Part shown: positions 34,855 to 59,514 of the stretch, in pieces
Layout of the letters: each line of letters starts with the position of its first letter
Numbering within the stretch: the stretch's first letter is position 1
Assembly: GCF_001194135.2 (NCBI RefSeq)
Contig: NC_068991.1
Span: forward strand, 41,024,334-41,088,333
DNA length: 64,000 nt
Direction of reading: 5' to 3'
From: Octopus bimaculoides
Lineage: Eukaryota
Position numbers and translations under genes: made by a program
The notes under the pieces: model-generated
What the model was told of the DNA's origin: nothing
Database searches by the model: none
What the model saw: only the letters and a program-made list of their open reading frames with translations

Positions 34855-35002
34855 TCATTCTGCATTGGTGAAGCTAATTTCTTCATCTAATTTATGTTCT
34901 TCAGTAGCTGATGATGGTATATTTTCAAATGAAACTGTTGATTCTGGTGTATTCATTAGAAGAGCATCTTGCATGTTTCGAGCATATTTTTGAGCCTTTT
35001 CT
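34855..35002 (-). CDS. MEIOSIN: MEIOSIN/BHMG1-like gene, coding exon 14 (HMG helix 3, acidic tail, stop)
   Basis: Acceptor gatgtttccAG, phase 2. (K)EKAQKYARNMQDALLMNTPESTVSFENIPSSATEEHKLDEEISFTNAE* completes the HMG box (RPYK-EKAQKY). Confidence 0.85.
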
Positions 35003-37256
35003 CTGGAAACATCATTAAAAGCCACAAAGAGATAAATAACTTGTTAATAAACAGAGATTACAAAAATAATATAATTCTTTGGTAAATTGTAATTTTGTTA
35101 TCAAATTTCACTTGTTATGTAACATATTTGTATAATCTTGAAATTAAATTTTGTTTCTGTTATTTAAACTTTGTATCAACCCAACACTACCTAAAAACTC
35201 TGTGCCTCTACTAATTTAATATACTGTATTGCATAGTCACTTTAATATTATGTATATAAATATCTCAGTTTCTGTCTGGATGATTATTCAGGGAACATTT
35301 ACATGATGTTCATAAAAATGTATTTTAAAATGTATTCGTGAAGGTTAATATTACAACTCTCCTGATCACTCCCTTCCCACCCTTCTGTCTTTGGAAAAAT
35401 CGTGAATTTGGTGTGAACACAATCAGCCAACTTAGACCACAGCTGCTCATTTTCAAACTGGGAACCTCTGCTCAAGTGGTATGAATACTTGCTTAATTTT
35501 CCCCTCCTACTCTTCAAAGTTCTCTGTGTTTCTTTCGCCATGCAGACTTGCCTGTAATCAAGCTTATACTTCTAAAATATCCATTAGTTAAATGGGTGTC
35601 AATATATTTATTAATTGCACTAATAAAAAGTACAATAAAGATCTAACTTTTTTGTCAGTGATATTTTACATAACAACTAGGTATGATTTATCAATATATC
35701 AATAAATTAAATTGAATACAATTTCCTGCTTACTCACTCAGGTAGCAGTTCTGTATCTTTATCAGTTCTTGTTCAGCTGGTCTACTCCTCCTGTATCTTC
35801 ATCATTAACTTTTGTAAGATGTAGGACACTAATATTTATACACACATTACTTAACTTGTTTTGTTACTGTATTTCTAACTAAAATACTATCCTTTAGTTA
35901 AATTTTAAAATAATAGTGAACTTAGCCTGATTTTGTAAAACACTTATAAACTTTCTAAGGCAGCGTTTTGAGCACTACTTAGAAAATGTTAACACACATC
36001 TATGATAGAATTTTGCTTCAAATCTGCTTAAATTACTGATAATTACAGGTAAATGCAGTGAACTGTTAAATGATTTAAATATCATGATATAAAATGAATT
36101 ATTAATCCACTAATCACCACAAATGAATTACAATTCTAGTACAGAAAACTTGTGCACATTTTGAATTGGATCCAAATGAATATAGAACAAATAACATGAA
36201 ACATGAAATACTGAAATTTATCAAAACGTTTAAAAGTTATAAAATGAAATTAATTCACTCACTATAATCTGATTAAGCCCATTTGTCTGATTCAGACACT
36301 GATATGCCTCAAGCCAAAATACTATTAAGTCAAGCAGCAGTAAGTTTAAAACTTATTCCATTTCCACCTAACAGTCTTGTCTTCTGGTTCATTCAAGAGA
36401 AAATGCTGTTTTTGATGTCAATAATATCTACTAACGAACCAAACTGATGAAAGAAATTAACTCTGATGAGTGAGGATAGGCAACACAGCAATAATGAATA
36501 CCCATTTAAGTAAATCACAGACTCAGATCAAATATTAGTGATATCTAATGAAAGATAGTGAGATATAAGTGATTAACAGTTTGAAATAACATGGAAGTAG
36601 GTTGTTCCTTACTGTGTTTTGGGGTAAATAGTAACATACTCACTTTTACTCTTGTGTCAACAAGAAATAATCAGTTATCTTATCAGTCACATGAAAATTT
36701 TGAGTTAAATCAGGACAAAGTAGATTCATCACTTTTAATCTTTGTCTATGGTTACTTTCTTTGAAGAAGAATCTTTCTTGTGTGAACACACATAAGTGTT
36801 CTGACCAAACACTCAATGATGATAACATAGTAATATGCTTACTCACATTGCCATGTTATTTCACTACCCAACATTCCGCCTGAGATGGGTGCTAAAATTT
36901 CACACAACACTAGATTACAGCCATTAGATTACTGGAACAGTATCATACATAGTCAACCTATTTCACTAGCAGATATATCTATATTCATCAACAACATGAA
37001 CACATGTCCAGTACACCACCAACTGTCAAGGAATCACAACCACCCACATGTTCCAAAAGATCTAATTAGTCACAAGTTCATTTGTTGTGATACAATTGAG
37101 AAACCACTTCAAATACCTAATACAAAATGTTAACGCTTAAGTATTTTGTTACTGATAGACACAACAAAAAGAAAACAACATTGACCATCTGAAGCAAACA
37201 CATTTGAAGAGTGATCTGTCACCAAATTCATTATTATTGCTCTGAAAATTACTTAC

Positions 37257-37346
37257 TTATAAGGTCTTTGTTTATCCTCAGACATATTCCTCCAGGTGTG
37301 TCCCATCATTTTACTAATGTGAGAAGTGTGAACACCAGGGTTAGCA
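37257..37346 (-). CDS. MEIOSIN: MEIOSIN/BHMG1-like gene, coding exon 13 (HMG helices 2-3)
   Basis: tattatAG...GTAAGT, 90 nt, phase 2 to 2. (N)ANPGVHTSHISKMMGHTWRNMSEDKQRPY. Confidence 0.92.
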
Positions 37347-38012
37347 CTATAATATATTAAAATACAATATCACAATAAGTAAATTACAAAGCTGGCAGTA
37401 CAACAGCTTTAATAGTCACTGTGTGTGTGTGTGTGTGTGCGTGTGCGTGGTCAAGCTACTAGAAATAACAGCAAAATCTCTCTCAAATGACACAGTTCCT
37501 AGAAAAGGATACGCTGAATAATGTAGATAAAGTACTAGCTTTTTCTGGTCAGCAGCATTCGTTTTAGTTTTCAACTATTTCGGTTCAGATTGCACCAGCT
37601 GTGTTGGTTTGGAACAAGAAACTCTCAGGAGTCAACCATAATATTGAGGTCTTTTAGAGATGCTTTTAAGCTGTCCTCGAACGTTTGCTTTTGCTCTCCC
37701 TCCCCACCTCTAACAAGAACATGTGAATATGTTATTAGTAAGTATCAATCTGACAGCTCAAAATTCTGCAACAGATTAGTTATAATGAGCATGTAATTTC
37801 CAAATAAAAGATAAGTATATAAATAAAAGATAAGTAATACTATAATAATTCTTGGAATTTAGTATTAATTATCATTGTAGGTAAATTAGATAATCCCAAA
37901 GATTAAACAACAAAATATTAGGTTGTTTATTATTAATAAAACAGGAATTAATAATTGAAGATATACAACCCCAAAGGAATGTGTGACAGAACAAGGTCAG
38001 TGATTAGCTTAC

Positions 38013-38082
38013 TTAATAAATTTTCTCCTATTCATCTGACTGAACATCATAAAACCATTCATCCAGGAAACTCGCCGGTGAT
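38013..38082 (-). CDS. MEIOSIN: MEIOSIN/BHMG1-like gene, coding exon 12 (HMG helix 1)
   Basis: aaatAG...GTAAGC, 70 nt, phase 1 to 2. (D)HRRVSWMNGFMMFSQMNRRKFI. Confidence 0.92.
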
Positions 38083-38194
38083 CTATTTTAGGGAGGTATT
38101 CAATTTTATCTGTTTTCATTTTACTTTGAATAAAAATAAAAACAGCTTCAGTTAAACATTCTCATTGCAAACAGTTCACATTTCACAAAGTTAA

Positions 38195-39051
38195 CCATTT
38201 AACATTCAGATTACTCTGTAAAAGTATTTAAAAATTTATTCCATTATATTGCATATATAACATGTATTTGGTCCATATTTAATACAAAATCACATTAAAA
38301 TACAAATCAAAGACTGAAGAAAACACAAACATAAGAGAGGTGAAAAGAAAAGGAAAGAGGAAGAAAGCAAACATCAATTCAACACCAAGTGCCTCAATCG
38401 GTTGTACACCACAAGGTTCAACGGGACCTACTGAAGTAAGCCAATATGCTAATGGCACTACCATGGGCGATGGTGAGGCTAAGACATCGGAACAGCCAAG
38501 CACCCTCATGGGCATCACTTGATGCCACAGTAAGGCGAACTGCCAACGATGACAAGAACTTCGCTGTTAGTGGCCCGGCTCCTCCAAACATCTCAAACAC
38601 CACAGGCCGGAAGAAATGGTTCACTGACAAGATACTTAAGGATTTTGTACCATTCGGCTACAGAAGTAGTGACCCTCCCATTTACTGCAGCATCCAGGTT
38701 GTGGGAGAGTGCAAAAGAGTCACAAACTACAATGTCTTAGATAAGGCACCTACCTCTTACCCAGCAACAAAAGGTAAGACCATCTGTTTTCTTCCCATCA
38801 CTTCAGAATCAAGGGAATATTAACCTGAGTCAGGGCCCACTTAATGATTAAGTTTAGCTCAGTGACAAGCAAAACGACCAGCATTTAGGTGGCAAGGCAA
38901 ACCATGAAGGCCAGTGGAGTAAAATGTAATGCTTATTTACATTGTATTGTATTGTATTAATCTTGCAGCTTCAAGATTTAGACGATGTGATTGTTTATTT
39001 TTAAAATGACATAATAGTGAGGCTAGATCTGGCCAGTTTAATGTTAAAGGA
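38195..39051 (+). mobile_element. TTAA MITE (12155 family) split by a 695-bp retroelement insertion
   Basis: TTAA|CCATTTAACATTCAGATTACTCTGTAAAA, insert, then GTAAAATGTAATGCTTATTT...CTAGATCTGGCCAGTTTAATGTTAAAGGA|TTAA. GTAAAA is duplicated at 38218-38223 and 38919-38924. Confidence 0.8.
38224..38918 (-). mobile_element. 5'-truncated CRE-like non-LTR retrotransposon (restriction-like endonuclease C-terminus)
   Basis: TDGLTFCCWVRGRCLI*DIVVCDSFALSH...SVAEWYKILKY, then after a frameshift HFFRPVVFEMFGGAGPLTAKFLSSLAVRL...AWLFRCLSLTIAHGSAISIL. This fits the RPDG...WD...AE..K..KY...P...E..G...QRLS..I.RGNA pattern recalled for CRE-clade REL domains. Confidence 0.75.
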
Positions 39052-39146
39052 TTAAAGTAATATAAAAAGTATAGTGATAGCTAAAATAGTCAATTTTAAC
39101 TTTATATGAAGTCAGTAATGCAATAATTATTATGCATACATTGTAC

Positions 39147-39190
39147 CTTGTAGGTTTGAGAAAAGTGCATCAATCTTCATTTCAATATAC
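39147..39190 (-). CDS. MEIOSIN: MEIOSIN/BHMG1-like gene, coding exon 11
   Basis: gcatatttAG...GTACAA, 44 nt, phase 2 to 1, which is the phase needed between exons 10 and 12. (R)YIEMKIDALFSNLQ. Confidence 0.7.
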
Positions 39191-40145: not shown

Positions 40146-40257
40146 CTTTCACAACTGTCAAATGGTTCCTTATCACTAGATGCCCGATCCATCTTCTGAC
40201 GTCGTATATTGGCCACTTCATGAAACTTCCATTCATAGGATTCAAACTGATCGTCAT
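40146..40257 (-). CDS. MEIOSIN: MEIOSIN/BHMG1-like gene, coding exon 10
   Basis: ttatcacAG...GTTTGA, 112 nt, phase 1 to 2. (D)DDQFESYEWKFHEVANIRRQKMDRASSDKEPFDSCE. Confidence 0.75.
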
Positions 40258-41880: not shown

Positions 41881-42010
41881 GCTGTGAGAAGGTAGATATA
41901 TGGGCCATCCAGTTTTAAAAGACACTAAGACAAAGTCATTATTTAACAAGGGAGCCTCCATGCTGTTCAACCTGCTAAATATTGCTAAAAGAAGAACCAG
42001 AGAGAATTAA

Positions 42011-43743: not shown

Positions 43744-44035
43744 CTTTTTTAACAATGGCACTCCTTAACTGCCTTTGTAAACTATATTTCAATGGTTGCC
43801 CACAATCATCTGGTGAATATCTATCAGGGTAATCACAGTTTGCTTGATTTATTAATACTGTCTCTTTGAATGAACTGAGATCACTAGGGTTTGAAAGCAT
43901 GGTTGGTTGATTGGTAACTTTCATAAAACTGACAGGAGACACAGTGTTAGGAGAGACAAATTTGAGCACCTCTGCAGGTTCTTCAGATGCTTCAAACTTT
44001 TGCTCTTCTTGAACTCCTTTAAAATTTTCCAAGAT
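43744..44035 (-). CDS. MEIOSIN: MEIOSIN/BHMG1-like gene, coding exon 9
   Basis: ttttctaaatgcAG...GTTAGA, 292 nt, phase 0 to 1. ILENFKGVQEEQKFEASEEPAEV...LRSAIVKK (97 codons). Confidence 0.8.
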
Positions 44036-44544
44036 CTGCATTTAGAAAATACATAAAAATCATTCAGAAATGTGAACATCACTTAATTTTAAGATTATAG
44101 AAGCTGAAACCCTCATCTGTGCAGAAAAAGAAATTTATATACAAGGTGCAGAATGACTTATTTATTTTTATCAGAATACAAATCTTAATATCACCTTGTA
44201 TCTATTCATTTTTACCAACACTATTCCCAGTGGAAATGGTTTTTATTTAAATTTGTGATAAACTACTGTTCATACAACTGATCCAAATGCCAATGTTCCT
44301 TCTTCACTCACTTGACAGTGCACATATTAATATAGGGCTTCGCAGTAAAAATTTCCTAAATTACTGGTAAATCTCATCAATTAACAGCATTTATTATTGT
44401 TATTGGTTTTAGTTACTTGTGAAGGATGAAGCCCATGCCAATACTGATTGGACAAATTTAATATTTTAGCACAGATGTAATTACAAAATAATTTTTATAA
44501 AGTAGCAAATGAAGTCATCAACAAATATAACGATATGTCATGTA

Positions 44545-44727
44545 AATGGCATGTAAAAAGCACCCATTACACTTTTGGAGTGGTTAGCGTTAGGAAGGGC
44601 ATCTAGCAGTAGAAACCATGCTAAATCAGACTGGAACGTGGTGCAGCTCTCTGGCTTACCAGTTCCAGTCAAACTGACTAATCCATGCCAGTATGGAAAG
44701 TGGATGTTAAATGATGATGATGATGGA
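44545..44727 (+). mobile_element. RTE 3' end
   Basis: GTGGTTAGCGTTAGGAAGGGCATCTAGC...ATGGAAAGTGGATGTTAAATGATGATGATGATG. Confidence 0.75.
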
Positions 44728-44812
44728 AGTTTGCAAAAAAATATTTTAATAAACAAAAGGTAAAAAAAGCAAGCTAAGAAAATCATTCAAATCATTGAAG
44801 ACAAGCAATTAC

Positions 44813-44926
44813 CTGAGGCAACATTGGGTCACCAGTAAGAAGAGCTGGGTGCTTCAGTTTATATTCAGATATCAAACATGGAGTTTGAGTAACTGTAATA
44901 ACCTCGCCAGGAGCAGATTCAGCAAA
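44813..44926 (-). CDS. MEIOSIN: MEIOSIN/BHMG1-like gene, coding exon 8
   Basis: aatttttAG...GTAATT, 114 nt, phase 0 to 0. FAESAPGEVITVTQTPCLISEYKLKHPALLTGDPMLPQ. Confidence 0.75.
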
Positions 44927-45487: not shown

Positions 45488-45543
45488 CGTAGGATCATGA
45501 AGTACAACTTTTTGTTCTAAATTTAATTCTGGATTTGTAACTT
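45488..45543 (-). CDS. MEIOSIN: MEIOSIN/BHMG1-like gene, coding exon 7
   Basis: ttttcctctttctatAG...GTAAGA, 56 nt, phase 1 to 0. (E)VTNPELNLEQKVVLHDPT. Confidence 0.8.
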
Positions 45544-45823: not shown

Positions 45824-47164
45824 TCTATATATATAAAAGAGAGTGAGTGTGTGTGTGCACGCATGTTCCTTATGAATTTTGAAACTGAGTTGCTGATTTT
45901 GACACATGGGGTATCAAAAGATTCAGTAATCTTTCAGCTACCAAATATATTTTATTTTCATTTACACATTTTCTACATTACCTCAACAACCAGCTTTAGT
46001 TATTTGAAAGACACTGCTCTACAATGACCAGGTTTTATTAGAAAGAGAAAACAGTTTCTCACTTTCAATTTGAACTCTGTGAATAATGAAAATAATGTTT
46101 CTCTGAAATAGTCACATCTGCACTATAATAAAGAAAGCTACTTATCATCTATCTATATATATTGGTCATCCCATAAGTAATGGCTGTTTTTTCAATTGCA
46201 TGAACTAAAAGTCAGAGGGGGACAGGATAAACTACCTGCATCAAGTTGCTATAAAAGCAGGTAGTAATTTTACCTTGTCCTTTTTCTTAATTCAAGTTTT
46301 GAAGAGTGCAGTTCGATTTTAACAGTTATTTTTTCAAAGCTATAATGGAAGTGACAAAGGAGCATATTCGGCATATTTTGCTTTATGAGTTCAATAAAGG
46401 CAACAATGCAACAGAGAGTGTGAGGAATATTAATGCAATATATGGGGATCAGACAATAAGAATAAGCCAGTCTCAACTGTGGTTCCAGAAATTCCAAGTA
46501 GGAAACTACAGCCTAGAAGACAAGCCTCATCCTGGAAGATTTGTAGAGCTTGACAAGGACGTCCTGCAAACTCTGTAACAAAATCCTGTCGTAACTGTTG
46601 AGGAACTAGCAAAGAAGCTTGGATTCGGTCATTCAAGTCAGCACTAGAAGAAAAACGACCATCTTTGGTTTCAAAACAAAAGGTGTTCTTCCATCAGCAT
46701 AATGCTCGGCCACATACAGTGAGGATGACATTCCAAAGGCTGGAGTAGTTCTAATGGGAAACGATGCCCCATCTGATTATCATTTATTCTGCAGTCTTCA
46801 AAATCATTTGGACGGAAAAAATATGAATCCTATAGGCAAGGTCAGAACAGCAGTGGAGGAGTATTTTTTGTCATGAACAAGTGAATTTTGTAAGAAGGAG
46901 CCTTGCAAGTCTACCAGATAAATGGAAGAGTATTGTAGAAAATGAAAGAGAGTATATTTTAGATTCAAAAAGAACTTTATCTTAATTTTGAAAAAGTAAA
47001 AGTATAAAAAAACTGCATTATTTATGGGATGACCCAATACAAAGGCTACCAAATAAGCTATGTTTTTGGCACAACAACTATTTTTTCTTACTAAAATCAC
47101 CTCAGAAAAGAGGTCAGGTCACACAATTTTGAGGTCATTTTTGGGCAATATCCTCACTTGCTAG
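45824..47164 (+). mobile_element. Complete non-autonomous Helitron-like element carrying a mariner derivative
   Basis: A|TCTATATATATAAAAGAG start and GGGCAATATCCTCACTTG-CTAG|T end. The flanks of the mariner match the empty copy at 14912-15424. Confidence 0.75.
46162..47037 (+). mobile_element. Internally deleted mariner with both TIRs and TA duplication
   Basis: TA|TTGGTCATCCCATAAGTAATG ... CATTATTTATGGGATGACCCAA|TA. HTH remnant MEVTKEHIRHILLYEFNKGNNATES..., joined at GGTCATTCAAG|TCAGC to the C-terminal FFHQHNA...DEYFL region. Confidence 0.9.
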
Positions 47165-47623: not shown

Positions 47624-47818
47624 CTGTTTCACAAGTTGGAGTCACAATACTAAAAGTATAGGTACCTACAACCAATCCATCATTGGGAAAGAAAATATTT
47701 AATGTATTGTCATTATCAGTTTCACAGGTGAAGTTGAAATCTGGAGAAAATTGGTTCCTTTCTGTGTCTATTACTGTCGAACAAGGTTTCATGGTGTTGT
47801 TTGAAGTACTTTCTATAT
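47624..47818 (-). CDS. MEIOSIN: MEIOSIN/BHMG1-like gene, coding exon 6
   Basis: gtttcaaggtttcAG...GTGAGT, 195 nt, phase 1 to 1. (D)IESTSNNTMKPCSTVIDTERNQFSPDF...VTPTCET. A second AG 7 nt upstream would be out of phase with exon 5. Confidence 0.78.
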
Positions 47819-47879
47819 CTGAAACCTTGAAACAATATAGAAAATATCCTATTAAAATATTAGTTAAAAATATTTATTT

Positions 47880-48112
47880 CTTTATATCCACAAGGGGCTA
47901 AACATAGAGGGGACAAACAAGGATAGACAAAGGGTTTTTCAGTTGATTCCATCAACCCCAGTGCATAACTGGTACTTATTTAATAGACCCCAAAAGGATG
48001 AAAGGCAAAGTCGATCTTAGTGGAATTTGAACTCAATGTAATGGCAGACAAAATACCGCTAAGCATTTCGCCCGGCGTGCTAATGATTCTGCCAGCTCAC
48101 CGTTAAAAATAT
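47880..48112 (-). mobile_element. Near-complete SINE, dominant family
   Basis: Reverse complement of the 15805-16030 copy (AACTGGTACTTATTTAAT...GGATGAAAGGCAAAGTCGA...CTAAGCATTTCGCCCGGCG). Confidence 0.8.
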
Positions 48113-48219
48113 TGAAAACTAAGGCAACAGTAACAAAAACACAACTTTAAAAGACACTGATATTCTCCCATTATCTATTAGTTTACCATATGTGTTCTGT
48201 CAAAAATAACTGATTTATC

Positions 48220-48370: not shown

Positions 48371-49329
48371 TCCTGTGTAAATGGACATAGTTTTTTTTTG
48401 TATGTAGGGTCTTCCATACCTTTTATAAAAGTGAAAGGATTTTGTCCATTTATTTGTTTATTTTGACTGCCTACCTGCAACGATAACACATGTGTTATGT
48501 CTCCAGTAATTTTCTGTAAATAAATGTTTAAAAAATCTTAGCTGTTATTTTTAGCACAAAATGTGGGTGAAGGTAAAGAATATGCACACCTGGTGTTTAG
48601 GGTCAGGATTAGGATTAGGGTTACACTGAAAATGGATGGTGTGTGTATTCTTTATCTCCACCTAACACGTTATGTCTCTGGTAATTTTCTTTCATGTAAA
48701 TAAATATTAATTAAAAAATTTGCCAGCAAAATCTTATAAAATGACAATGTTCAAAAAGATGTACGTGTTTAAGTTATATATGAAAATAAGAGTGAACAAA
48801 ATATGCTTAAAAAACAACTATATTTTGTAGTCCAGATCCATAATCAACTCCCAAAACACTTCAGTAGCTCTACTTTGCATTGCTTGCAAACTTATATGTT
48901 CTATAATCATTTAAGTGCAACAACCTCCACAATAACCAGATTTCAATTTGATTTTCTGTTCCTAGGTTAATCGGAAACATAGATTGCCATGCTACTCATA
49001 AACCTTCTCAGTAGTTCAATCATTTAGTGAAAAAAATACCACTAAAGCAACTTAAAATATCCAAAGGACAGGTGCATTTGCTAGTTCCTTCAATAAACTT
49101 TTAATTTTTGTTAAATTTGAACTAACAGTGGATTTTTAAACTTCAATCCAGGTTTTCCTTCTATTATGTATTACCACTGATATAACCATCATGTATTATC
49201 ACTGATATAATAATTTTGTTTTAAAAATGTTATTTTAGTTTAAGTTAAAACAAAACAAAATATTGTTTATTACATATTTAGCCTCTTGCATTTTGAAACT
49301 GAACTATATATATCTTTTGACTAAAGACA

Positions 49330-49472
49330 CAAGGCTGGAACTTATTTTATAGCCCCCAAAAGAATGAAAGGCAAAGTCAACCTCAACAGAATTTGAACTC
49401 AGAACATAAAGCCAGAAGAAATGCTGCTAAACATTTTGTCTGAATTGCTGAAGATTCTGCCAGCACACTGCC
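49330..49472 (-). mobile_element. SINE fragment
   Basis: GAATGAAAGGCAAAGTCAACCTCAACAGAATTTGAACTCAGAAC. Confidence 0.7.
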
Positions 49473-50662: not shown

Positions 50663-51680
50663 ATCATCATCGTTTAGCGTCCGTTTTCTATGCTAGCATG
50701 GGTTGGATGGTTCGACTTGGGTCTGGGAAGCCAGGAGGCTGCACCAGGCTCCAGTCTGATCTGGCAGTGTTTCTATAGATGGTTGCCCTTCGTAACACCA
50801 ACCATTCTGTGAGTGTAGTGGATGCTTTTTACGTGCCACTGGCACAGGGGCCAGAGGAGGCTGGCAGTGGCCACAATCGGTTGGTGCTTTTTACATGCCA
50901 CCAGCACGGAAGCCAGTCAAGGCGGCACTCGCATCAGCCATGTTCATTCTGATGGTGCTTTTTACCTGCCACCAGCACGGGTATCACAACTACAATTTCC
51001 ATTTCATTTTCATTTTGATGTTGATGTACTTGACTCAATAGGTCTCCTCAAGCACAGCAGGTTGCCCTACAATCCAAGGTACTTTTGAATGGGCTGGGAC
51101 TGGTTATGTGAAACTGGTGTAGGATACAGCCGTGAACTCTCTTTATTTGCCGGGTCTTTGCAGTCACAGCATATCTCCAGAGGTCTCGGTCTTTCAGCAT
51201 TGCCTCTGTGAGGTCCAACGTTCGAAGGTCATGCTTCACTACCTCATCCTATGTATTCCTGGGTCTACCCCTACCCCGGATTCCTTCAACTGTCTGGGAG
51301 TGGCACTTCTTCACACAGCTCTCCTCATCCATCCATAGTACATGACCATACCAGTGCAAACGTCTCCCTTGCAAACTGCATACAATGCTTCTTATGTCCA
51401 ACATTTCTCTCAGGGCGCTTACACCTTGTCGTGTGTACACACTGACATTACGCATGTCCTCCGCAGTCACGGCCCATGTTTCACTGCTGTGAAGCATGGC
51501 AGTTCGCACACATGCATCGTACAATCTAGCTTTCACTCTGAGCGAGAGGTCCTTTGTCACCAGTAGGGGTAGAAGTTTTCTAAACTTTGCCCAGGCTATT
51601 CTTATTCTAGTGGTAACACTCTCAGAGCATCCACCCCCACTACTAACTTGGTCACTTAGGTAGCGGAAGCTATCAACTAC
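50663..51680 (-). mobile_element. RTE LINE 3' portion (RT C-terminus, 3'UTR with short internal repeats, (GAT)n tail)
   Basis: TKDLSLRVKARLYDACVRTAMLHSSETWAVTAEDM...LHWYGHVLWMDEESCVKKC...RGRGRPRNT; tail CATCATCATCGTTTAGCGTCCG. Confidence 0.88.
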
Positions 51681-51954
51681 TTCTAGTTCTACACATATAT
51701 ATATAAATATATGACAGGCTTCTTTCAGTTACTGCCTTTCAAATTCACTCACAAGGTTTTGGTTGGCCCAAGGCTACAGCAGAAAGCACTTGCTCAAGGT
51801 GCCATGCAATTGGACTGAACCTGGTACCAAGTGGTTGGGAAGCAAACTTCTTATGACACATCCACACCTGTGCCTATTTAAATAAAACATTTTTTTAATG
51901 CATTCTCTGAAATATTCAAAGTTCTAAAAACTAAGAACTTTTAAAATTGTGATT

Positions 51955-52350
51955 CATCATCATCATCATTGTTTAACGTCTGTTTTCCATGCTGACATGG
52001 GTTGGATGGTTTGACTAGGAACTGGGCAAGCCAGGAGGCTGCACCAGGCTCTAATCTGATTTGGCAAGGTTTCTACAGCTGGATGACCTTCCTAACACCA
52101 ACCACTCCAAGAGTGTAGTGGGTGCTTTTTACCTGCCACAGCACAGGAGCTAGTAGGGTGGCACTGGCATTGGCTACGTTCGGATGGTGCTTTTTACGTG
52201 TCATCGGCACAGAAGCCAATTGGGGCGAGGGGCTGGCATTGACCATGTTCAGCTGGTGCTTTTTACGTGCCACCAGCATGGGGAGCCAGTCAAGTGACAC
52301 TGGCATTGATCCACACATGAATTGTACTTATTGTGTACCACCAGCACGGG
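51955..52350 (-). mobile_element. RTE 3'UTR/tail with repeated GGTGCTTTTTACGTG units
   Basis: (CAT)n-TGTTTAACGTCTGTTTTCCATGCTGACATGGGTTGG, then several GGTGCTTTTTAC(C/G)TG(C/T)CA units. Confidence 0.8.
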
Positions 52351-52789
52351 TGTCAATCAGGTGACACAAACTTATTGGAGTGGTAGAAACAGCACAAATT
52401 TCTAGACTAAGTAACTGATCAATTTCTGGAGGCTGACTTTGCAATTCATCCTCAGAATCAATAAAATAAGTGCTACATTTTTAAGCAACAATGACCTTCT
52501 TCTAGAAATATGTGATGCCATGCTAATGTAAGAAAACATTGTTTCAAGAAATTTAAAATATTACCAAATCACAAGTTGATGAACATTCATTCTTCCACTG
52601 TTCATATGTATCATAACCCCACAAGGCTCTTCTTATATCTGCAATTGTACAATTATGTTGATTAGAACATCATTTGCAAGATATTACATACAAGAAACAA
52701 TAATGCATCTAATTTCTGTGTAGATATAAGAAAAGCAAGAGACATGTAAGGAGCCATACAGTCAGAGTTACATACAAAAAAATAAATAC

Positions 52790-52919
52790 CTTCTCTGCTG
52801 AGTCTGACAGTTAGGAACATTTTGGATAAGTCCACTGTTACTCTGAGCTCTTTGCAAACTTGGTTGATCATCTTCTCCAAGTATACAATATAACAAATGG
52901 CACGTTGCATGGTCACTAC
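52790..52919 (-). CDS. MEIOSIN: MEIOSIN/BHMG1-like gene, coding exon 5 (bHLH helix 2)
   Basis: aattgattttAG...GTATTT, 130 nt, phase 0 to 1. VVTMQRAICYIVYLEKMINQVCKELRVTVDLSKMFLTVRLSRE (K..T...AI.YI..LE helix-2 signature). Confidence 0.9.
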
Positions 52920-53184
52920 CTAAAATCAATTCAATATCATAAATGGGAAATGTTTGTTCAGTTTGGTTATAAAATGTCAAATATTTTAAAAGGACAATTA
53001 CTATGAGATCATACAACAGCTACTGTGTTCCTAAATCTGCTCACTAATGGTTCCTACTAGTAGCACCCATTCCCCTAAAGGAATGGTGAACAATACATTA
53101 ACTTTAAATTCAATTACAGTCACTACATGTATTACATAAGGGTATAAAAGTCGGGGAACACTGTAAGTATCCAAGTGTTTTGGA

Positions 53185-53400
53185 TCATCAAATGTCCACT
53201 TTCCATGCTGGCATGGGTTAGACGGTTTGACTGGAACTGGTAAGCCAGGGAGCTGCACCAGGTTCCAATCTGATTTGGTGTGGCTTCTACAGCTGGATGT
53301 CCTTCTTAATGCCAACTACTCCAAGAGGGTAATGAGTGCTTTTTATGTGCCATTAATGACAACAGCAATGGCCATGACTACGATGTATAGCAAAAAAAGT
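53185..53400 (-). mobile_element. RTE 3' end
   Basis: CCACTTTCCATGCTGGCATGGGTTAGACGGTTTGACTGGAACTGG...CTACAGCTGGATG. Confidence 0.7.
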
Positions 53401-53599
53401 TGCAAAACACTGGTTTAAACAATGCCAAAAATCTGATATCATTTGTGCTTCCTGATTGAGTGGCAGGAAAGGCATCCAGCTGTAAAAAGAATTACTTCAG
53501 TAAAAAAGCCACCACATCCATTCAAGGGAATAAAAGATGTTAAAAAAAAGAGTAAACAATATATCCCTCAGAGAGAGTCTACCAAATATTGAACCAATT

Positions 53600-54176
53600 A
53601 AGGGACTAGCCAATTGATAGCAGCATAATAGATAAGGCAATTAAGGACGTGAAGACAGGGAAAGCCCCTGGGCCCTCAGGAATCACTGCCGAGATTATTA
53701 AAATTTCCAGTGATGTAGGATACAGCTTAGTCACCCATATAGTTAATCAGGTTATTCAGGGAGGCACTATCCCCAATGACTGGTGTAGTAGTATTATAGT
53801 TAGCTGCTATAAGGGTAAAGGTGATGCCTTAGATAGACACAACTACAGAGGTAGACCAAGTCATGAAAGTTACTGAGAGGGTTATAGCTGTCAGTGCAGG
53901 TGCTACTTAAAAGCACCCAGTCTACACCGTAAATTGATTGGTGTTCAGAAGGGCATCCAGCTGTAAAAACCTTACCAAAACTGACTCACCTGTGCTTGTG
54001 TCACATAAAAAGCACCAAGTCCACTCTGCTGAGTGGTTAGTGTTAGGAAGGGCATCCAGCTGTAAAAATCCTGTCAAAACAATCACAGAAGTCTGGTGCA
54101 GGCTTCTGCCTGGCTGGCTTTTGTGAAACCATCCCACCCATGCTAGCATGGAAGGTGGACGTTAAACGATGATGAC
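53600..54176 (+). mobile_element. RTE RT N-terminal fragment followed by RTE 3' ends
   Basis: MKTGKAPGPSGITAEIIK...IPNDWCSSIIVSCYKGKGDALDRHNYRG (RT domain entry), then two AGGAAGGGCATCCAGCTGTAAAAA units and GCATGGAAGGTGGACGTTAAACGATGATG. Confidence 0.85.
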
Positions 54177-54644
54177 TTCTATAAAGCTGCTCTAGAAAGA
54201 AATTATGAGTTATCACCATCATTACCATTTTATCGTCCACTTTTCCCATTGGATTGGTCAGAGAGAATCTATTGAAGTGGATTTTCTACAATTGGATGCC
54301 CATCTTGTCTCCAACCCACACATATTTCCAAGTAAAGTAGTACTACCCCATGGCTAGGCATGCTTTCCCATAAGACTAGAAACAACTACTACACAATATC
54401 AAGTCAAGGAGATACACATACACATGTACAACATGCTTCTTTCAGTTTCCATCTACCAAATTTATTCACAACACTTTGGTCAGTCAGGTGGTAGAGTAGA
54501 AGAAACTTGCCCAAAGTTCCACACAGGGGAAGTGAACCAGAAACTACATGATTGGGGAGTGAACTTCTTAACTACAGTCATGAGTATTATTTTTAAATTT
54601 GTGAATATACAAGAAAAAAAGACAAAAAAATTCATATTCAAAAC

Positions 54645-54729
54645 CTTAGTTCCTTTAGAATATTCTGAATATCCAGGTATTTGTTTATACAATTTATTCA
54701 TTAATTCATTTAAAGTACGGTGACGAACT
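54645..54729 (-). CDS. MEIOSIN: MEIOSIN/BHMG1-like gene, coding exon 4 (bHLH basic end, helix 1, loop)
   Basis: ctctctctttctAG...GTTTTG, 85 nt, phase 2 to 0. (R)VRHRTLNELMNKLYKQIPGYSEYSKGTK. Confidence 0.9.
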
Positions 54730-55551
54730 CTAGAAAGAGAGAGAGAAGAAAAATAAAGCAATATTACGAAATAGAATTTATTTCTTAAATTTTCAACATT
54801 ACAAGGTAATAAATTATTGGTACATTATGAGTGTTTTTGCTTCAATGTTACATTGTACAACTGAATATATCTATAGATTTCAGCCATTTGTTTTATATAC
54901 AGTATTTTCCTAGACAGAAAGAGGTGTTAGCCAGTCTAGTTTCACTCCTTTGTTGGGATTTCATCAGCAACTAAATACGTCTCTAACTGACTAGAGACAC
55001 TGCTTATAAATCCACTATGACTTAGGGCCTTAAGTAAATTAGAAACACTGGTTTGTTTATATAACATTATTGGTAGCAAGTTCAATTAAAAAATAACTGG
55101 TGTACTAACATTAAATCTATATTGTACTATAGAATATATACAGAGATAGATTAAAATGACTACTCTCAACTGTTTATGGTCAAGCCAGAGGCAATGGAGA
55201 CCTCCAGTGTTCTCAGCCACTTGACCATATCCCTACTCACCACTATCAGGGCAGAGATGGCTATTTGCAAGTGTGAGCCCCCATGAGTCAAAGTGACTGT
55301 TCCAGCACATCTCTCTCACCATTGTCCGGGGCAACACCTTTCCCATTTTGTCTGTTGGGACCACAAAGCAGTCTGAATTACAGGAAATCAAAAGGATCTG
55401 AGAATTTCATGGCTTAATTCTTTTTTTCTATTTCTTCTCTCCTTTCTTTTTTCTTTTGGTTCTCATTTAAATATTATTTTTCTTAATAGTAAATATCATG
55501 GTTATGTTAAAATAAAAGCAAACTAAATATAAAAAAAGGAAATAAGAATAC

Positions 55552-55709
55552 CTTTCATTTTCTCTGTGCTTTTGCATCAGTTTCTGTGAAGATTTTTGTG
55601 CTTGTCTTTGTTTTGAATACTGATATTGGACATAATTTGAATGTGCATGTAGCACAACAGGAGACTCGAGGAGTGGGTAATTTCCACGGGGTCTTCGCTT
55701 TTTAGAAGA
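55552..55709 (-). CDS. MEIOSIN: MEIOSIN/BHMG1-like gene, coding exon 3 (NLS-like KKRRPR, basic region start)
   Basis: atgttttctAG...GTATTC, 158 nt, phase 0 to 2. SSKKRRPRGNYPLLESPVV...SQKLMQKHRENE(R). Confidence 0.88.
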
Positions 55710-56222
55710 CTAGAAAACATTTTGAATATAAAATATATAAAATTCTTTATATAAATAGTAATTTGTAAGAAGTTTTTACATTTCTAATTCAAAATAATTT
55801 AATTCTAATTTACTACAATTATTTTTTCAATGAAATAAATACACCAATTCTTTTCACACCAAACAAATCAATGAGGAGAGCCTCTACATGGTCACTTAAC
55901 CTGCTAAAAATAACAGCTAAATTCACACACGCGTTACAATCTTAAGATTTAAAAAATGGACATATTGAATAACATGGCCTTGGGTTTCCTACTTATGGGG
56001 AAAACATAGGATAGTCACAACTGGAATGTTTTTCATCATAGGTATACCCAGAGCTGACCTGCAATGAATCAGTAAGAGATGATAAATGCAGGTAAGCTTT
56101 AATGAGATGTTTTCTTCTGAAGTCATTAATATTTTAATCAAAATGAAACTAAACTTATAAATAATATTTATTTTATCAATTTCACACACATATAAATGTG
56201 AGCATGCAAAAGTGGATGTTTC

Positions 56223-56260
<38 letters not shown>

Positions 56261-56626
56261 CAATTAGAAAATGGAGGATAATATGCTGAACCCAACTACT
56301 TGCAGACAGTGTATCCCGTTGAATTCATTAATTTAATTCATAGCAAAAGTGACAAAAAAAGGAGAAAAAGAAAGAAAGAACCAAAGCACAGGTGTCTATG
56401 GCAGACTATGTTATTTTGCCAACCTGGTTTACATATAGAAGTACAAAGTACATAAGGAGTTAGAGGATGAACAGAAGTTTAATCTTCATCCGATAATCAC
56501 NNNNNNNNNNNNNNNNNNNNNNNNNNNNNNNNNNNNNNNNNNNNNNNNNNNNNNNNNNNNNNNNNNNNNNNNNNNNNNNNNNNNNNNNNNNNNNNNNNNN
56601 NNNNNNNNNNNNNNNNNNNNNNNNNN

Positions 56627-56671
<45 letters not shown>

Positions 56672-57381
56672 GCTTTCGATATTTTCAACCAAGACATTAC
56701 AACTGTATTTGTTCAAATGCTTCAATTATGTATATGTACATATATTTACTCAATTGCTTATATTTATCAATGGCTTCTCCCATTGTTTTGTTGCACTATT
56801 TTCTATCATTAATAGAACTGTTGGCATCTTTGAAAACCTGGATATGCTAGTGAGTTTATAAATCACACGTTTTTCCTAAATATTGCAAGTAACTAATTGC
56901 AAAAATATTTAGATAATATAAAAGACATTTAGCTGAAATAATTCTAATCATTTTCAAAACAATCTACCAAAGTCCCAGCACCAAACAAGAGCAATGCTTT
57001 CTGTAATTTCATCTAGGAACAGAGCAACCAGTGCTTATCAACTGTCATTCATGATAGAGTGACAACTTACAGTACTTTTAATGGGCATTAAAGAGTTGAG
57101 CTAGCTTATAGGGAATTGTGCATATATCATACACATGTGCATGTGAGTTGTTATTCATTTCTTTCATGCTTGCATGAGTTGGATGAATATGCCAAGGTGT
57201 TCATATTCAATATCATTTTCCAGTATGTGTGTGTGGGTCATATGTATATTGTGTGCGCATATGCATTAATTTACACAACTTTCAAATCCTGAGCAAGGTT
57301 CTATAAACAAGTTGCATAGATAATTTTTATTGTGCTTCCTTTTTTTTGTTTTGGCAATATACTGTCACTTATCTTAAAGTG

Positions 57382-58101
57382 TTGGATCATCCTATAAATA
57401 ATGCGGTTTTTTTGACTGCATGAACTAAAAGTCAGAGGGGGACGGGATAATCTACCTGCATCAACTTGTTATAAAAGCAGGTAGTAATTTAATCTTATTC
57501 TCAGCACAACGTTTGAGGAGTGCAGTTCGATTTTAACAGTTATTTCTTCAAAGCTATAATGGAAGTGACAAAGGAGAATATTAGGCATATATTGCTTTAT
57601 GAGTTGAATAAAGACAACAATGCTACAGAAAGTACAAGGAATATTAATGCAGTATATGGCGATTGAACAATAAGCATATAAGTCAGCGCTAGAAGACCAT
57701 CTTTGGTTTCAAGACAAAAGGTGTTCTTCCATCAGGATAATGCTGAGCCACATGCAACAAGGATGACATTCCAAAGGCTGGAACAGTTTGAATGGGAAAC
57801 GATGCACTACCCACCGTGTTCACAGGACATTGCTCCATCTGATTATCATTTATTCCTCAGTCTTCAAAATCATTTGGACAGTAAAAATATGAATTCTGTA
57901 GACAAGGTTAGAACAGTACTGGAGGAGTATTTTTCATTATGGACAAGTAAATTTTGGAAGAGGGGCCTTGCAAGTCTACCAGATAGAGGGAAGAGCATTG
58001 TAAAAAATGAAGGAGAATATATTTTAGATTAAAAAAGAACTTTATCTTAATTCTGAAAAATAAAAGCATAAAAAAACCGCATTATTTATGGGATGACCCA
58101 A
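57382..58101 (+). mobile_element. Free-standing, more deleted mariner of the 46162 family
   Basis: TTGGATCATCCTATAAATAATGCGG ... CCGCATTATTTATGGGATGACCCAA|TA. C-terminal remnant VFFHQDNAEPH...YPPCSQDIAPSDYHLFLSLQNHLD. Confidence 0.9.
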
Positions 58102-58169
58102 TATATATAGTGATGTGATAATTTGTTAACAATTAATGGAACACATTCTAAATCAAGGAATTATTTTAC

Positions 58170-58364
58170 CTTTTTGAAGACATTCTTTTTAAAGTGCCTC
58201 AATTGATTGTTAGAAATACCATTAAACCTCTGTTTCTTAGAGTTAATAATTATCTCTTGTTCCTCAGTGCTGCTAGAACTAATTGCATGGATCTCACTGA
58301 TATATTCTGGAACCTTTTGGTCTTCATGAATGAGATGTGGTTTAGCTTTAAATTCATCAAGGCA
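58170..58364 (-). CDS. MEIOSIN: MEIOSIN/BHMG1-like gene, coding exon 2
   Basis: gtttcatttcAG...GTAAAA, 195 nt, phase 0 to 0. CLDEFKAKPHLIHEDQKVPE...QLRHFKKNVFKK. Confidence 0.75.
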
Positions 58365-58504
58365 CTGAAATGAAACTGAGGAAAGACTAATATCTGAAAT
58401 GAGAAACATTTACAATTATAAGAGCTTGACATAATATACAAATTAGTATGAAAATAATGAAGTTAAATTTAAAGGGAGTAAAAAATGGCTCATAAAAAAT
58501 TAAA

Positions 58505-58765
58505 GTATCGAGATCGTTGCCGGTGCCCCTGGACTGGCTCTTGTGCAGGTGGCACATAAAAGACACCATTTCGAGCGTGGCCATTTTCGTGCGGGTGACA
58601 CGTAAAAGCACCCACTACACTCTCTGAGTGGTTGGCGTTAGGAAGGGCATCCAGCTGTAGAAACTCTGCCAAATTAGATTGGAGCCTGGTGTTGCCATCC
58701 GGTTTCACCACTCCTCAGTCAAATCGTCCGACCCATGCTAGCATGGAAGACGGACGTTAAACGAT
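58505..58765 (+). mobile_element. Young RTE 3' end, very similar to 33830-34048 and 60961-61226
   Basis: GTGGTTGGCGTTAGGAAGGGCATCCAGCTGTAGAAACTCTGCC...GCATGGAAGACGGACGTTAAACGA. Confidence 0.85.
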
Positions 58766-59415
58766 TTTCTGCTATTGACCCAATTGGTTATGTTGCCTTG
58801 AGACACAGGACTAAGGACTCAGTCTCATTGAGCACAAAGTACTCTCCCAAGTCAAGAGGACACTTTCATTTTAAGGATAACTTCTCTAATGCTATTGCTG
58901 CAATAAAATACACCCAGTACACTCAGTAATATAGTTGAGCTGGAAAGGTACAAATAAAAGTGGTTCTCTAAGCTATCTAGGGGATAGTAACTCCAAATAA
59001 GAACTGACTCAAACAATAATGACTTGTCCAACCAATACTAGCATGGAAAGTAAGTGTAATATGACCATAGTGATGATTATCATTATTTATATGGCTAAAA
59101 TATTTGTTAGTCTTGTTGCAGATTGAAACTCAGGGATATATATTCCAAGTTTTCTGCAGTACAGTGCAGGTACTGTTACTGCAGTTTCAAATTTCTTGAA
59201 CTCTCAACAGAATTTGTTTAACTCCATTAGTTGTGATGATGTAAAGATAAAGTTGTTGACTTTACAGAAAATGCTCCCCCACCCCCCACAATGATGTGTG
59301 CTAATTTGTTTACCAGTGTTACTTTGATGACATAATATATAAAGCCAGGGTATTCTTGGACTACAAACTGCCATTTTCACTGACAACTTTCCATTAGTAA
59401 TTCCTTGGCATTTAC

Positions 59416-59514
59416 TTTTGCTGATGTTTCCCCCAACAACTTGATCTTAGTTTGTCTAGGACCATTAGTTTCTATCAACAATTCTTTATTAATTTCATGA
59501 ATTTGTTGACTCAT
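59416..59514 (-). CDS. MEIOSIN: MEIOSIN/BHMG1-like gene, candidate first coding exon
   Basis: Acceptor tttttttttAG at 59518-59519, then TCT-ATG. MSQQIHEINKELLIETNGPRQTKIKLLGETSAK followed by donor GTAAAT, phase 0. The start codon is uncertain. Confidence 0.6.

What the first reader, a model, noticed from the sequence alone, without database searches (positions are those of the whole stretch)
34855..59514. Hidden 14-exon bHLH + HMG-box gene: an invertebrate, probably cephalopod, MEIOSIN/BHMG1-like meiotic-initiator candidate
Seen in sequence: 14 minus-strand exons, all GT-AG and phase-matched, give one stop-free ORF of about 595 aa. It has a bHLH (KHRENERVRHRTLNELMNKLYKQIPGYSEYSKGTKVVTMQRAICYIVYLEKMINQV, exons 3-5), a long S/T/E/P-rich linker, and an HMG box (WMNGFMMFSQMNRRKFINANPGVHTSHISKMMGHTWRNMSEDKQRPYKEKAQKYARNMQ, exons 12-14). 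Established: bHLH plus C-terminal HMG box in one protein is the architecture of vertebrate MEIOSIN (BHMG1), the STRA8 partner that triggers meiotic entry. From memory, its HMG box carries an NGF.MF..MNR motif like the one here. Inference: this is a protostome orthologue, implying the meiotic-entry switch is older than vertebrates. Middle exons 6-11 rest mainly on splice phase.
Basis: partly seen in the sequence, partly recalled or inferred. Interest (0 to 1): 0.88.

Follow-up and report, generated by a model that had tools for sequence, protein, structure and literature searches.

The report
Octopus orthologue of meiosis initiator MEIOSIN
The window holds a real, spliced and transcribed octopus gene for a bHLH plus HMG-box transcription factor that shares its domain order and four exact intron positions with mammalian MEIOSIN, so this gene family predates vertebrates, although its role in octopus meiosis is untested.

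Summary
The gene is real. One 1900-nt RNA contig (run X1) joins 13 minus-strand GT-AG exons from 58393 to 34744. It links the bHLH exons to the HMG exons and crosses the N gap, which is intronic. The ORF is 597 aa in the window, with Pfam HLH and HMG_box hits. It is 100% identical to Octopus bimaculoides A0A0L8IEK8 and 96% to O. sinensis LOC118765447.

It has no RNA support, carries a frameshifting indel in O. sinensis, and the true 7-nt first coding exon maps about 2.3 kb beyond the window end.

The gene is not hidden. It is annotated as uncharacterized, and as BHMG1-1 in Argonauta.

A profile search of 1.84 billion proteins shows one bHLH-HMG family in molluscs, annelid, brachiopod, priapulid, echinoderms, hemichordate and vertebrate MEIOSIN. 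Four introns (two in the bHLH, two in the HMG box) fall in the same alignment column and phase in octopus, oyster, Lingula, Priapulus, sea star and cheetah MEIOSIN. HMG-box identity and an NJ tree alone are weak evidence.

Orthology is well supported. A meiotic role is inference only: transcripts occur in 2 RNA runs of this species, and their tissues are unknown.

The parts
58170..58393 (-). Coding exon 2 (224 nt). Its first 2 nt complete a codon begun in exon 1, which lies outside the window. Encodes the N-terminal region (D)ISLSSVSFQCLDEF...NVFKK.
   Evidence: RNA contig X1 covers 58386-58170. Acceptor ag at 58395-58394, donor gt after 58170. Same acceptor as in the O. sinensis RefSeq model.
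56501..56626 (.). Assembly gap (N run) inside intron 2, flanked by (TA)n microsatellites. It does not touch the coding sequence.
   Evidence: The exon 2 to exon 3 junction is read through, in frame, in RNA contigs of X1 and X2.
55552..55709 (-). Exon 3 (158 nt). Ends in the bHLH basic region (...KHRENE|R, phase-2 intron).
   Evidence: The intron position is shared with cheetah MEIOSIN and four invertebrate phyla.
54645..54729 (-). Exon 4 (85 nt). bHLH basic region end, helix 1 and loop (RVRHRTLNELMNKLYKQIPGYSEYSKGTK|, phase-0 intron).
52790..52919 (-). Exon 5 (130 nt). bHLH helix 2 (VVTMQRAICYIVYLEKMINQVCKEL...).
52565..52638 (-). Exon 6 (74 nt), linker.
47624..47825 (-). Exon 7 (202 nt), linker.
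45488..45543 (-). Exon 8 (56 nt), linker.
44813..44926 (-). Exon 9 (114 nt), linker.
43744..44035 (-). Exon 10 (292 nt), linker rich in S/T/E/P.
   Evidence: Its 31-mers are held by only two RNA runs of this species.
40146..40257 (-). Exon 11 (112 nt). Holds the mollusc-conserved motif ESYEWKFHEVANIRRQK upstream of the HMG box.
38013..38123 (-). Exon 12 (111 nt). Start of the HMG box (KIDHRRVSWMNGFMMFSQMNRRKFI|, phase-2 intron).
37257..37346 (-). Exon 13 (90 nt). Middle of the HMG box (NANPGVHTSHISKMMGHTWRNMSEDKQRPY|, phase-2 intron). This exon is also 90 nt in oyster, Lingula, sea star and cheetah MEIOSIN.
34744..35002 (-). Exon 14. End of the HMG box, C-terminal tail, stop codon at 34857-34855, and 3' UTR reaching at least 34744.
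59416..59514 (-). Rejected: it is intronic sequence with a chance ORF.
   Evidence: No RNA support. Incompatible with the RNA-supported exon 2 start. 90% identity and a frameshifting indel in O. sinensis.

Best explanation
This is the Octopus bimaculoides member of the MEIOSIN/BHMG1 gene family. It is a 14-coding-exon gene, with exons 2-14 in the window and exon 1 beyond base 64000. It is transcribed into one mRNA that encodes a protein of about 600 aa. The protein has an N-terminal bHLH domain, a long fast-evolving linker that is probably disordered, and a C-terminal SOX-type HMG box.

Shown here:
- The exon structure and a single transcript.
- Both domains are present.
- Strong purifying selection acts on the domains.
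- The gene belongs to a bilaterian-wide bHLH-HMG family that includes vertebrate MEIOSIN.
- Four intron positions are shared with mammalian MEIOSIN.

Inferred mechanism. The protein dimerises through the bHLH. Its basic region keeps the H-x3-E-R-x-R pattern of DNA-binding bHLH proteins, unlike the degenerate basic region of vertebrate MEIOSIN. It binds and bends DNA in the minor groove through the HMG box, in which the N-x-F-M wedge residues of SOX boxes are kept. It thereby switches on a gene set in a narrow cell population.

Inferred role, at roughly 45%. By orthology with mouse and zebrafish MEIOSIN, and from its very restricted expression, that population is germ cells at entry into meiosis. 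The factor would act without the vertebrate partner STRA8.
For: - One RNA contig spans exons 2-14 with GT-AG junctions.
- ORF of 597 aa; Pfam HLH E=1.1e-7 and HMG_box E=2.2e-14.
- Identity to O. bimaculoides, O. sinensis and Argonauta proteins, the last named BHMG1-1 by its depositors.
- dN/dS against O. sinensis is 0.03 in the two domains and 0.46 elsewhere.
- A profile search of 1.84e9 proteins finds 14 hits at E<1e-30, all with bHLH plus HMG. Weaker two-domain hits come from echinoderms, a hemichordate and the newt 'meiosis initiator protein'.
- Four introns share the same alignment column and phase in O. sinensis, Magallana, Lingula, Priapulus, Patiria and cheetah MEIOSIN. Introns in the linker are not shared.
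- The same four junctions are present in the window.
- hhalign HMG match: 98.5%, E=2.7e-15. hhalign bHLH match: 87-95%.
- The observed NJ tree puts protostome, ambulacrarian and vertebrate MEIOSIN boxes in one clade, apart from 88 other boxes, mostly SOX-like.
- Two SOX-like genes checked on genomic DNA have no intron in the box.
- Exon 10 is held by only 2 RNA runs of this species. It is absent from two other runs of the same study as X1, and the exons had zero depth in X3, X24 and X17 where laid.
Against: - No tissue label was available for any run, so germline expression is not shown.
- No functional data exist for any invertebrate member.
- Raw HMG-box identity does not separate MEIOSIN (about 41%) from SOX2 (about 41%).
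- Bootstrap for the joint clade is 17-21%.
- The bHLH match to vertebrate MEIOSIN is modest: 17.9 bits with the protostome profile and hhalign 87%. Any bHLH would align to some degree.
- STRA8, the vertebrate partner, was not searched for.
- The AlphaFold model was uninformative, with pLDDT 32.
Confidence: 0.8

Rival explanations
1. The gene has the same ancestry as MEIOSIN but a different job. In octopus it works as a transcription factor in some other restricted context, such as sex differentiation, later gametogenesis, or an embryonic or neural cell type. The meiotic-initiator role would then have arisen only in vertebrates.
For: - Function was not tested here.
- The invertebrate bHLH has a canonical DNA-binding basic region that vertebrate MEIOSIN lacks. 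This suggests a changed mode of action.
- The linkers share no detectable motifs with vertebrates.
Against: - Expression is very restricted, as expected for a germline stage-specific factor.
- Zebrafish and hagfish MEIOSIN keep germline expression even without a bHLH or STRA8 (PMC13637641). This points to an old core role for the HMG part.
Confidence: 0.3
2. The invertebrate gene is the single pre-duplication counterpart of both MEIOSIN and STRA8. Vertebrate STRA8 is also described as having a bHLH and an HMG-like domain. The octopus gene would then be co-orthologous to both rather than a strict MEIOSIN orthologue.
For: PMC13637641 states that STRA8 is predicted to contain a bHLH and an HMG-like domain. 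No STRA8-like protein appeared among the invertebrate hits.
Against: Among vertebrate proteins, only MEIOSIN appeared with both domains in the top 150 hits. No STRA8 sequence was available here to test, so this remains open.
Confidence: 0.15
3. Convergence. A SOX-like HMG gene and a bHLH gene fused independently in the lophotrochozoan line, so the resemblance to MEIOSIN is only architectural.
For: The nearest solved structures by sequence are SOX2 and SRY. UniRef auto-names several members 'Sex-determining region Y protein'.
Against: - Two introns in the bHLH and two in the HMG box are identical in position and phase in six lineages, including mammalian MEIOSIN.
- The SOX hallmark MNAFMVW is replaced by the MEIOSIN-like NGFxMF.
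- Ambulacrarian proteins bridge the two groups.
Confidence: 0.03
4. The model is an artefact: two neighbouring genes, or an untranscribed chance ORF chain.
For: None beyond the unsupported exon 1.
Against: A single 1900-nt RNA contig covers all 13 exons. The ORF is intact in two other cephalopods.
Confidence: 0.01

Closest known systems
Vertebrate MEIOSIN / BHMG1 (mouse Gm4969; 'meiosis initiator protein'), the STRA8 partner that activates meiotic genes
   Same: - N-terminal bHLH, long low-complexity middle, HMG box near the C-terminus.
- HMG signature NGFxMF..(M/L)NR...PG...WR.M...RPY.
- Four intron positions and phases, including the 90-nt middle HMG exon.
   Different: - The octopus basic region is canonical (KHRENERVRHRTLNEL). 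The vertebrate one is degenerate (ERRQRKNHTSKLQEL).
- Only about 41% identity in the HMG box.
- Vertebrate linker motifs (LGLSPSLFTSPG, SSSDEDGD.TWTP) are absent.
- No STRA8 partner is known outside vertebrates.
- Function and expression in octopus are untested.
Unnamed invertebrate bHLH-HMG proteins: Magallana gigas XP_011425869, Pecten LOC117323468, Lottia LOTGIDRAFT_235519, Aplysia LOC101857319, Lingula LOC106162714, Owenia CAH1792961, Priapulus LOC106806471, Patiria LOC119746243, Saccoglossus LOC102804171
   Same: - Same family.
- HMG box nearly invariant across Lophotrochozoa (DxRKTSWMNGFMMFSRLNRxxFIxANPGVHTSHISK).
- bHLH motif HRxNERxRHHxLN...ETKVVMMQRIIxYIxYLE.
- Same introns.
   Different: The cephalopod linker has diverged. 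For example, the SSPTIDSTTD and NKRKQYTPKRSPF motifs of other molluscs are barely recognisable. All of these proteins are annotated 'uncharacterized'.
SOX family (SRY-related HMG box)
   Same: Sequence-specific HMG box type. SOX2 is the best solved-structure match (E=3.4e-10). The N, F and M wedge residues are kept.
   Different: - SOX proteins have no bHLH.
- The SOX hallmark RPMNAFMVW reads SWMNGFMMF here.
- About 41% identity to SOX2 by my count, and under half to SRY in the aligned stretch. This is below the 50% to SRY usually required for SOX, a criterion I recall from memory.
- Two phase-2 introns in the box; the two SOX-like genes checked had none.
STRA8
   Same: A vertebrate germline bHLH factor with an HMG-like region. 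It works with MEIOSIN (PMC13637641).
   Different: It was not compared here because no sequence was available. Its domain order is reported to differ. Its relationship to the invertebrate gene is open.

Membership tests
MEIOSIN/BHMG1 | bHLH and HMG box in one polypeptide, with the bHLH N-terminal to the HMG box | tested here: met
   A single RNA contig joins the exons. Pfam HLH at residues 120-169 and HMG_box at 503-560 of the 597-aa ORF.
MEIOSIN/BHMG1 | HMG box of the MEIOSIN type rather than SOX, TCF or HMGB | tested here: inconclusive
   In favour: the signature NGFxMF/PG/RPY is shared with MEIOSIN and differs from SOX MNAFMVW; hhalign 98.5%; the observed NJ tree gives one clade. Against: bootstrap is only 17-21%, and identity to SOX2 equals that to MEIOSIN (about 41%).
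MEIOSIN/BHMG1 | Gene structure: introns splitting the bHLH (basic region, phase 2; loop/helix 2, phase 0) and the HMG box (two phase-2 introns around a 90-nt exon) | tested here: met
   Identical alignment column and phase in O. sinensis, oyster, Lingula, Priapulus, sea star and cheetah MEIOSIN. The same junctions occur in the window.
MEIOSIN/BHMG1 | bHLH specifically related to the MEIOSIN bHLH | tested here: inconclusive
   hhalign protostome vs vertebrate 87% (E=4e-6); ambulacrarian vs vertebrate 95%; protostome vs ambulacrarian 99.3%. No other bHLH families were included as a contrast. The closest solved bHLH matches are weak: NeuroD1 and MYC.
MEIOSIN/BHMG1 | Expression restricted to germ cells at the mitosis-to-meiosis transition | tested here: inconclusive
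   Only 2 RNA runs of the species hold exon 10 (X1 depth 62, X2 depth about 2), and several others have none. Tissue names are coded, so the gonad cannot be confirmed.
MEIOSIN/BHMG1 | Binds STRA8 and activates meiotic gene promoters; loss blocks meiotic entry | not testable with these tools
   Needs experiments. STRA8 was not searched for in molluscs.
SOX | HMG box with the RPMNAFMVW motif and at least about 50% identity to the SRY box, and no bHLH (criterion from my own knowledge of the SOX nomenclature) | tested here: not met
   The motif reads SWMNGFMMF. About 41% identity to SOX2 over 54 aligned residues. A bHLH is present.

The most novel reading that the evidence does not exclude
The last common ancestor of bilaterians already used a MEIOSIN-type bHLH-HMG factor, with a DNA-binding bHLH and no STRA8, to switch germ cells from mitosis to meiosis. 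The octopus gene still does this. The vertebrate MEIOSIN-STRA8 pair would then be a derived elaboration, and the bHLH-less forms of zebrafish and hagfish would be secondary losses.
Probability: 0.4. Interest if true: 0.85.

Novelty: new member of a known kind. Interest (0 to 1): 0.62.

Why it matters
How animals decide to enter meiosis is well described only in vertebrates (retinoic acid, STRA8, MEIOSIN), and those factors are usually treated as vertebrate inventions. The latest comparative study (Genes Dev 2026, PMC13637641) surveyed vertebrates only. It left open whether the bHLH is ancestral and what the pre-vertebrate state was.

The evidence here shows a MEIOSIN-family gene in cephalopods and across protostomes and ambulacrarians. 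These genes have both domains, a more canonical bHLH, and the same gene structure as the mammalian gene. This has three consequences:
- The ancestor had both domains.
- The bHLH-less MEIOSIN of zebrafish and hagfish reflects secondary loss.
- There are concrete candidate genes for testing meiotic entry in oysters, sea stars, annelids and cephalopods.

The functional claim itself remains to be tested.

Tried and rejected
I used shorter stretches, and loose ends bridged the gap.
- The spliced window protein was not accepted by the representative search. I used the database copies P0001-P0003 instead.
- AlphaFold on the 3-sequence alignment gave pLDDT 32. Only the secondary structure agrees with a bHLH and a 3-helix HMG box, and no fold search was attempted.
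- The third homologous-protein search, with concatenated bHLH+HMG segments, returned one fragment only. Cnidarian, cephalochordate and arthropod members could therefore not be looked for.
- SOX intron controls. P0134's gene range was too long. P0066 came from a transcript assembly. Only P0137 and Nematostella P0119 gave genomic information, and both are intronless.
- The Saccoglossus locus is not on record.
- Literature searches for the locus and accession names of the invertebrate members found nothing. Searches for MEIOSIN with invertebrate, mollusc or metazoan terms found no study of invertebrate orthologues, apart from a sea-anemone preprint that lists 'Meiosin' among meiotic genes without analysis.
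- An alternative start at the in-frame ATG 58409 (MFLISD...) was considered and rejected. No RNA covers 58387-58470, and O. sinensis splices at the same acceptor.
- An ORF-rich stretch at 42468-42094 was considered as a middle exon and rejected, because it is not in the transcript.

Full report
**1. What is in the sequence**

The window is AT-rich and full of repeats. Its protein is 100% identical to a UniProt entry of Octopus bimaculoides, so the window is O. bimaculoides DNA.

The whole model could be checked against RNA. Public run X1 holds one 1900-nt contig (depth 62) that lies on the minus strand in 13 blocks, from 58386 to 34744. Every skipped stretch is CT..AC on the + strand, which is GT..AG for the gene. 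Run X2 shows the same junctions at low depth.

After resolving the 2-3 ambiguous bases at each junction to GT/AG, the exons are:

| Exon | Coordinates |
|---|---|
| 2 | 58393-58170 |
| 3 | 55709-55552 |
| 4 | 54729-54645 |
| 5 | 52919-52790 |
| 6 | 52638-52565 |
| 7 | 47825-47624 |
| 8 | 45543-45488 |
| 9 | 44926-44813 |
| 10 | 44035-43744 |
| 11 | 40257-40146 |
| 12 | 38123-38013 |
| 13 | 37346-37257 |
| 14 | 35002-34744 |

They give one open frame of 597 codons with the stop at 34857-34855. Pfam finds HLH (E=1.1e-7, residues 120-169) and HMG_box (E=2.2e-14, residues 503-560). The bHLH exons and the HMG exons therefore belong to one transcript.

**2. The assembly gap**

The N run 56501-56626 lies in the intron between exons 2 and 3. 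RNA contigs of X1 and X2 end their match at 58170 and continue with the first bases of exon 3, and the frame is kept. The gap does not affect the gene.

**3. Exon 1 is wrong and the gene runs off the window**

- It is not in the RNA contig.
- It would be in phase only with an acceptor at 58365, but 58386-58365 is exonic in the RNA.
- The orthologous O. sinensis stretch is 90% identical, like the introns, and carries a 1-nt indel inside the supposed ORF. The 13 real exons are 97.6% identical.

The O. sinensis RefSeq protein begins ME|D. Its first coding exon is ATGGAAG|gt, 10 kb upstream of exon 2. By synteny this lies about 2.3 kb beyond base 64000. The window therefore holds 13 of the 14 coding exons.

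**4. The gene is already annotated, but not understood**

The protein search found three entries:
- O. bimaculoides A0A0L8IEK8: a 479-aa partial model starting at an internal Met, 100% identity.
- O. sinensis LOC118765447: 'uncharacterized', 601 aa, 96% identity.
- An Argonauta hians entry that its depositors named 'basic helix-loop-helix and HMG box domain-containing 1-1': 68% identity.

'Hidden' is therefore not correct.

**5. The family**

A profile of the three cephalopod proteins was run against 1.84 billion representative proteins. It gave 14 hits below 1e-30 and 42 below 1e-10. Names were recovered for 30 of the hits.

The strong group holds:
- Molluscs: oyster, scallop, limpets, abalone, periwinkle, mussel, pearl oyster, Aplysia, Bulinus, Sinanodonta.
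- The annelid Owenia.
- The brachiopod Lingula.
- The priapulid Priapulus.

A local scan with family-specific bHLH and HMG profiles showed both domains, in the same order, in a weaker set:
- Two crinoids, a brittle star, a sea cucumber and a sea star.
- The hemichordate Saccoglossus.
- The newt 'meiosis initiator protein'.

A search seeded with five vertebrate sequences confirmed that this last group is bona fide MEIOSIN/BHMG1 of mammals, turtles and amphibians. Every invertebrate member is 'uncharacterized' or 'hypothetical' at NCBI.

**6. Is it an orthologue of MEIOSIN?**

*Weak evidence.* The octopus HMG box is about 41% identical both to newt MEIOSIN and to SOX2. SOX-like boxes score about as well as MEIOSIN boxes against the protostome HMG profile. 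In an NJ tree of 121 boxes, the protostome, ambulacrarian and vertebrate MEIOSIN boxes form one clade apart from 88 other boxes (mostly SOX-like) and five reference boxes. Bootstrap support is only 17-21% for that clade and 32-43% for protostome plus vertebrate.

*Better evidence.* The signature NGFxMF replaces the SOX MNAFMVW. The HMG profile-profile match has probability 98.5% and E=2.7e-15. The bHLH matches form a chain: 99.3% protostome to ambulacrarian, 95% ambulacrarian to vertebrate, and 87% protostome to vertebrate.

*Decisive evidence: gene structure.* I mapped the exons of six proteins onto their genomic loci and aligned the six full-length proteins blindly. Exactly four introns fall in the same column with the same phase in all six. 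The six are O. sinensis, Magallana, Lingula, Priapulus, Patiria and cheetah MEIOSIN. The four positions are:
- In the bHLH basic region (..E|R.., phase 2).
- At the loop/helix-2 border (..TK|, phase 0).
- In the HMG box after ..(F/Y)(I/R/E)| (phase 2).
- In the HMG box after ..(P/Q/L)Y| (phase 2).

The HMG exon between the last two is 90 nt in five species and 93 nt in Priapulus. Introns in the linkers are not shared, so the coincidence is not a trivial product of the alignment.

The window has the same four junctions. Two SOX-like genes that could be read on genomic DNA, one of them from Nematostella, have no intron in the box. I recall that the SOX groups with an HMG intron have a single one at other positions, but that was not tested here.

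Shared introns in both domains, the same domain order, and a graded series of intermediates make independent fusion very unlikely. I conclude that the octopus gene is an orthologue, or a pre-duplication pro-orthologue, of MEIOSIN.

**7. Selection and likely mode of action**

Against O. sinensis, dN/dS is 0.03 in the two domains and 0.46 in the rest, with 0.29 overall. This is the pattern of a transcription factor with two constrained DNA/protein-binding modules and a fast-evolving linker.

The basic region (KHRENERVRHR) keeps the His/Glu/Arg pattern of DNA-binding bHLH proteins and is nearly invariant in invertebrates. The vertebrate MEIOSIN basic region is degenerate. The HMG box keeps the Asn-x-Phe-Met wedge of SOX boxes, and its closest solved structures are SOX2 and SRY.

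Inference: the protein is a dimeric factor that reads DNA through both modules. In vertebrates the bHLH has become mainly a STRA8-docking surface (PMC13637641).

**8. Expression**

The 31-mers of exon 10 are held by only two RNA runs of this species, X1 (depth 62) and X2 (about 2). They are absent from two other runs of the same study as X1. X3, X24 and the raw-read run X17 gave no depth on the exons where laid. Runs of a sister species hold the orthologue in a few samples.

Expression is therefore narrow, as expected for a stage-specific germline gene. However, run and sample names are coded, and I could not establish the tissue.

**9. Literature**

The 2026 Genes & Development paper on MEIOSIN evolution covers vertebrates only. 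It identifies bHLH-less orthologues in zebrafish and hagfish, and states that more distant species were not analysed. A 2025 sea-anemone preprint lists 'Meiosin' among meiotic genes lost in deep-sea lineages, without analysis. Searches for MEIOSIN with mollusc, invertebrate or metazoan terms, and for the locus names of the invertebrate members, found no study of them.

**10. Verdict**

- The interpretation as a cephalopod MEIOSIN/BHMG1-family orthologue is supported, chiefly by conserved gene structure.
- The claim that the meiotic-entry switch itself predates vertebrates is a reasonable but untested inference.
- The gene is not new to databases, but its family assignment and the bilaterian-wide conservation of MEIOSIN with an intact bHLH appear not to have been described.
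- This gives direct candidates for experiments on meiotic entry outside vertebrates.

Noticed in passing
window 58500-58770 (also 54040-54200, 53060-53260, 51880-52270, 47900-48100, 49300-49420, 44500-44750): Copies of a short interspersed repeat (core ...CGTTTAACGTCCG.CTTCCATGCTAGCATGGGT...). Word depth in RNA runs is enormous, up to about 5e5, far above any exon of the gene. The reads show many variant letters and internal joints, consistent with many dispersed transcribed copies.
   Followed up: no
window 57400-58100 (+ strand ORF 57703-58032) and 46250-47100: Two decayed mariner-type transposase remnants inside introns (VFFHQDNAEPHATR...DIAPSDYHLFLSLQNHL). The first sits next to the assembly gap and accounts for most of the extra length of intron 2 compared with O. 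sinensis.
   Followed up: partly
window 34040-34459 and 51252-51728 (minus-strand ORFs): Two copies of a retrotransposon-like ORF tail (…SETWAVTAEDMR…LRWYGHV.RM.E.SCVKKC…GRGRPRKTW…). Pfam finds no family for the copy tested. One copy abuts the gap at 34049-34090.
   Followed up: partly
window 29286-30032 (+): Intronless ORF for a 208-aa EF-hand protein (from MSHLEEISTDK...; Pfam EF-hand_7 E=6.7e-12). It is the downstream neighbour of the gene and is also annotated in O. sinensis (L001 50708-51334).
   Followed up: partly
L001 19163-41293 (O. sinensis): The O. sinensis annotation has a 110-aa gene model with no Pfam hit on the opposite strand, spanning 22 kb inside the MEIOSIN-like gene. It could be a repeat-derived or antisense model.
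   Followed up: no
L001 1-286 (O. sinensis), upstream of the gene: The upstream neighbour in O. sinensis is a translation initiation factor IF-2-type GTPase gene. Neither neighbour matches, from memory, the human BHMG1 neighbourhood (DMWD, RSPH6A, SYMPK), so microsynteny with vertebrates is not evident.
   Followed up: no
window exon 3, 55552-55709: O. sinensis has one extra codon here (KQRQQAQK versus KQRQAQK). This is the only length difference between the two species in the 13 exons.
   Followed up: yes
Proteins P0036-P0038, P0051, P0057 (Capitella), P0034 (Mactra): Several database entries carry only the family-type bHLH, or only the HMG part. These are probably split or truncated gene models of the same family in annelids and bivalves.
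   Followed up: no
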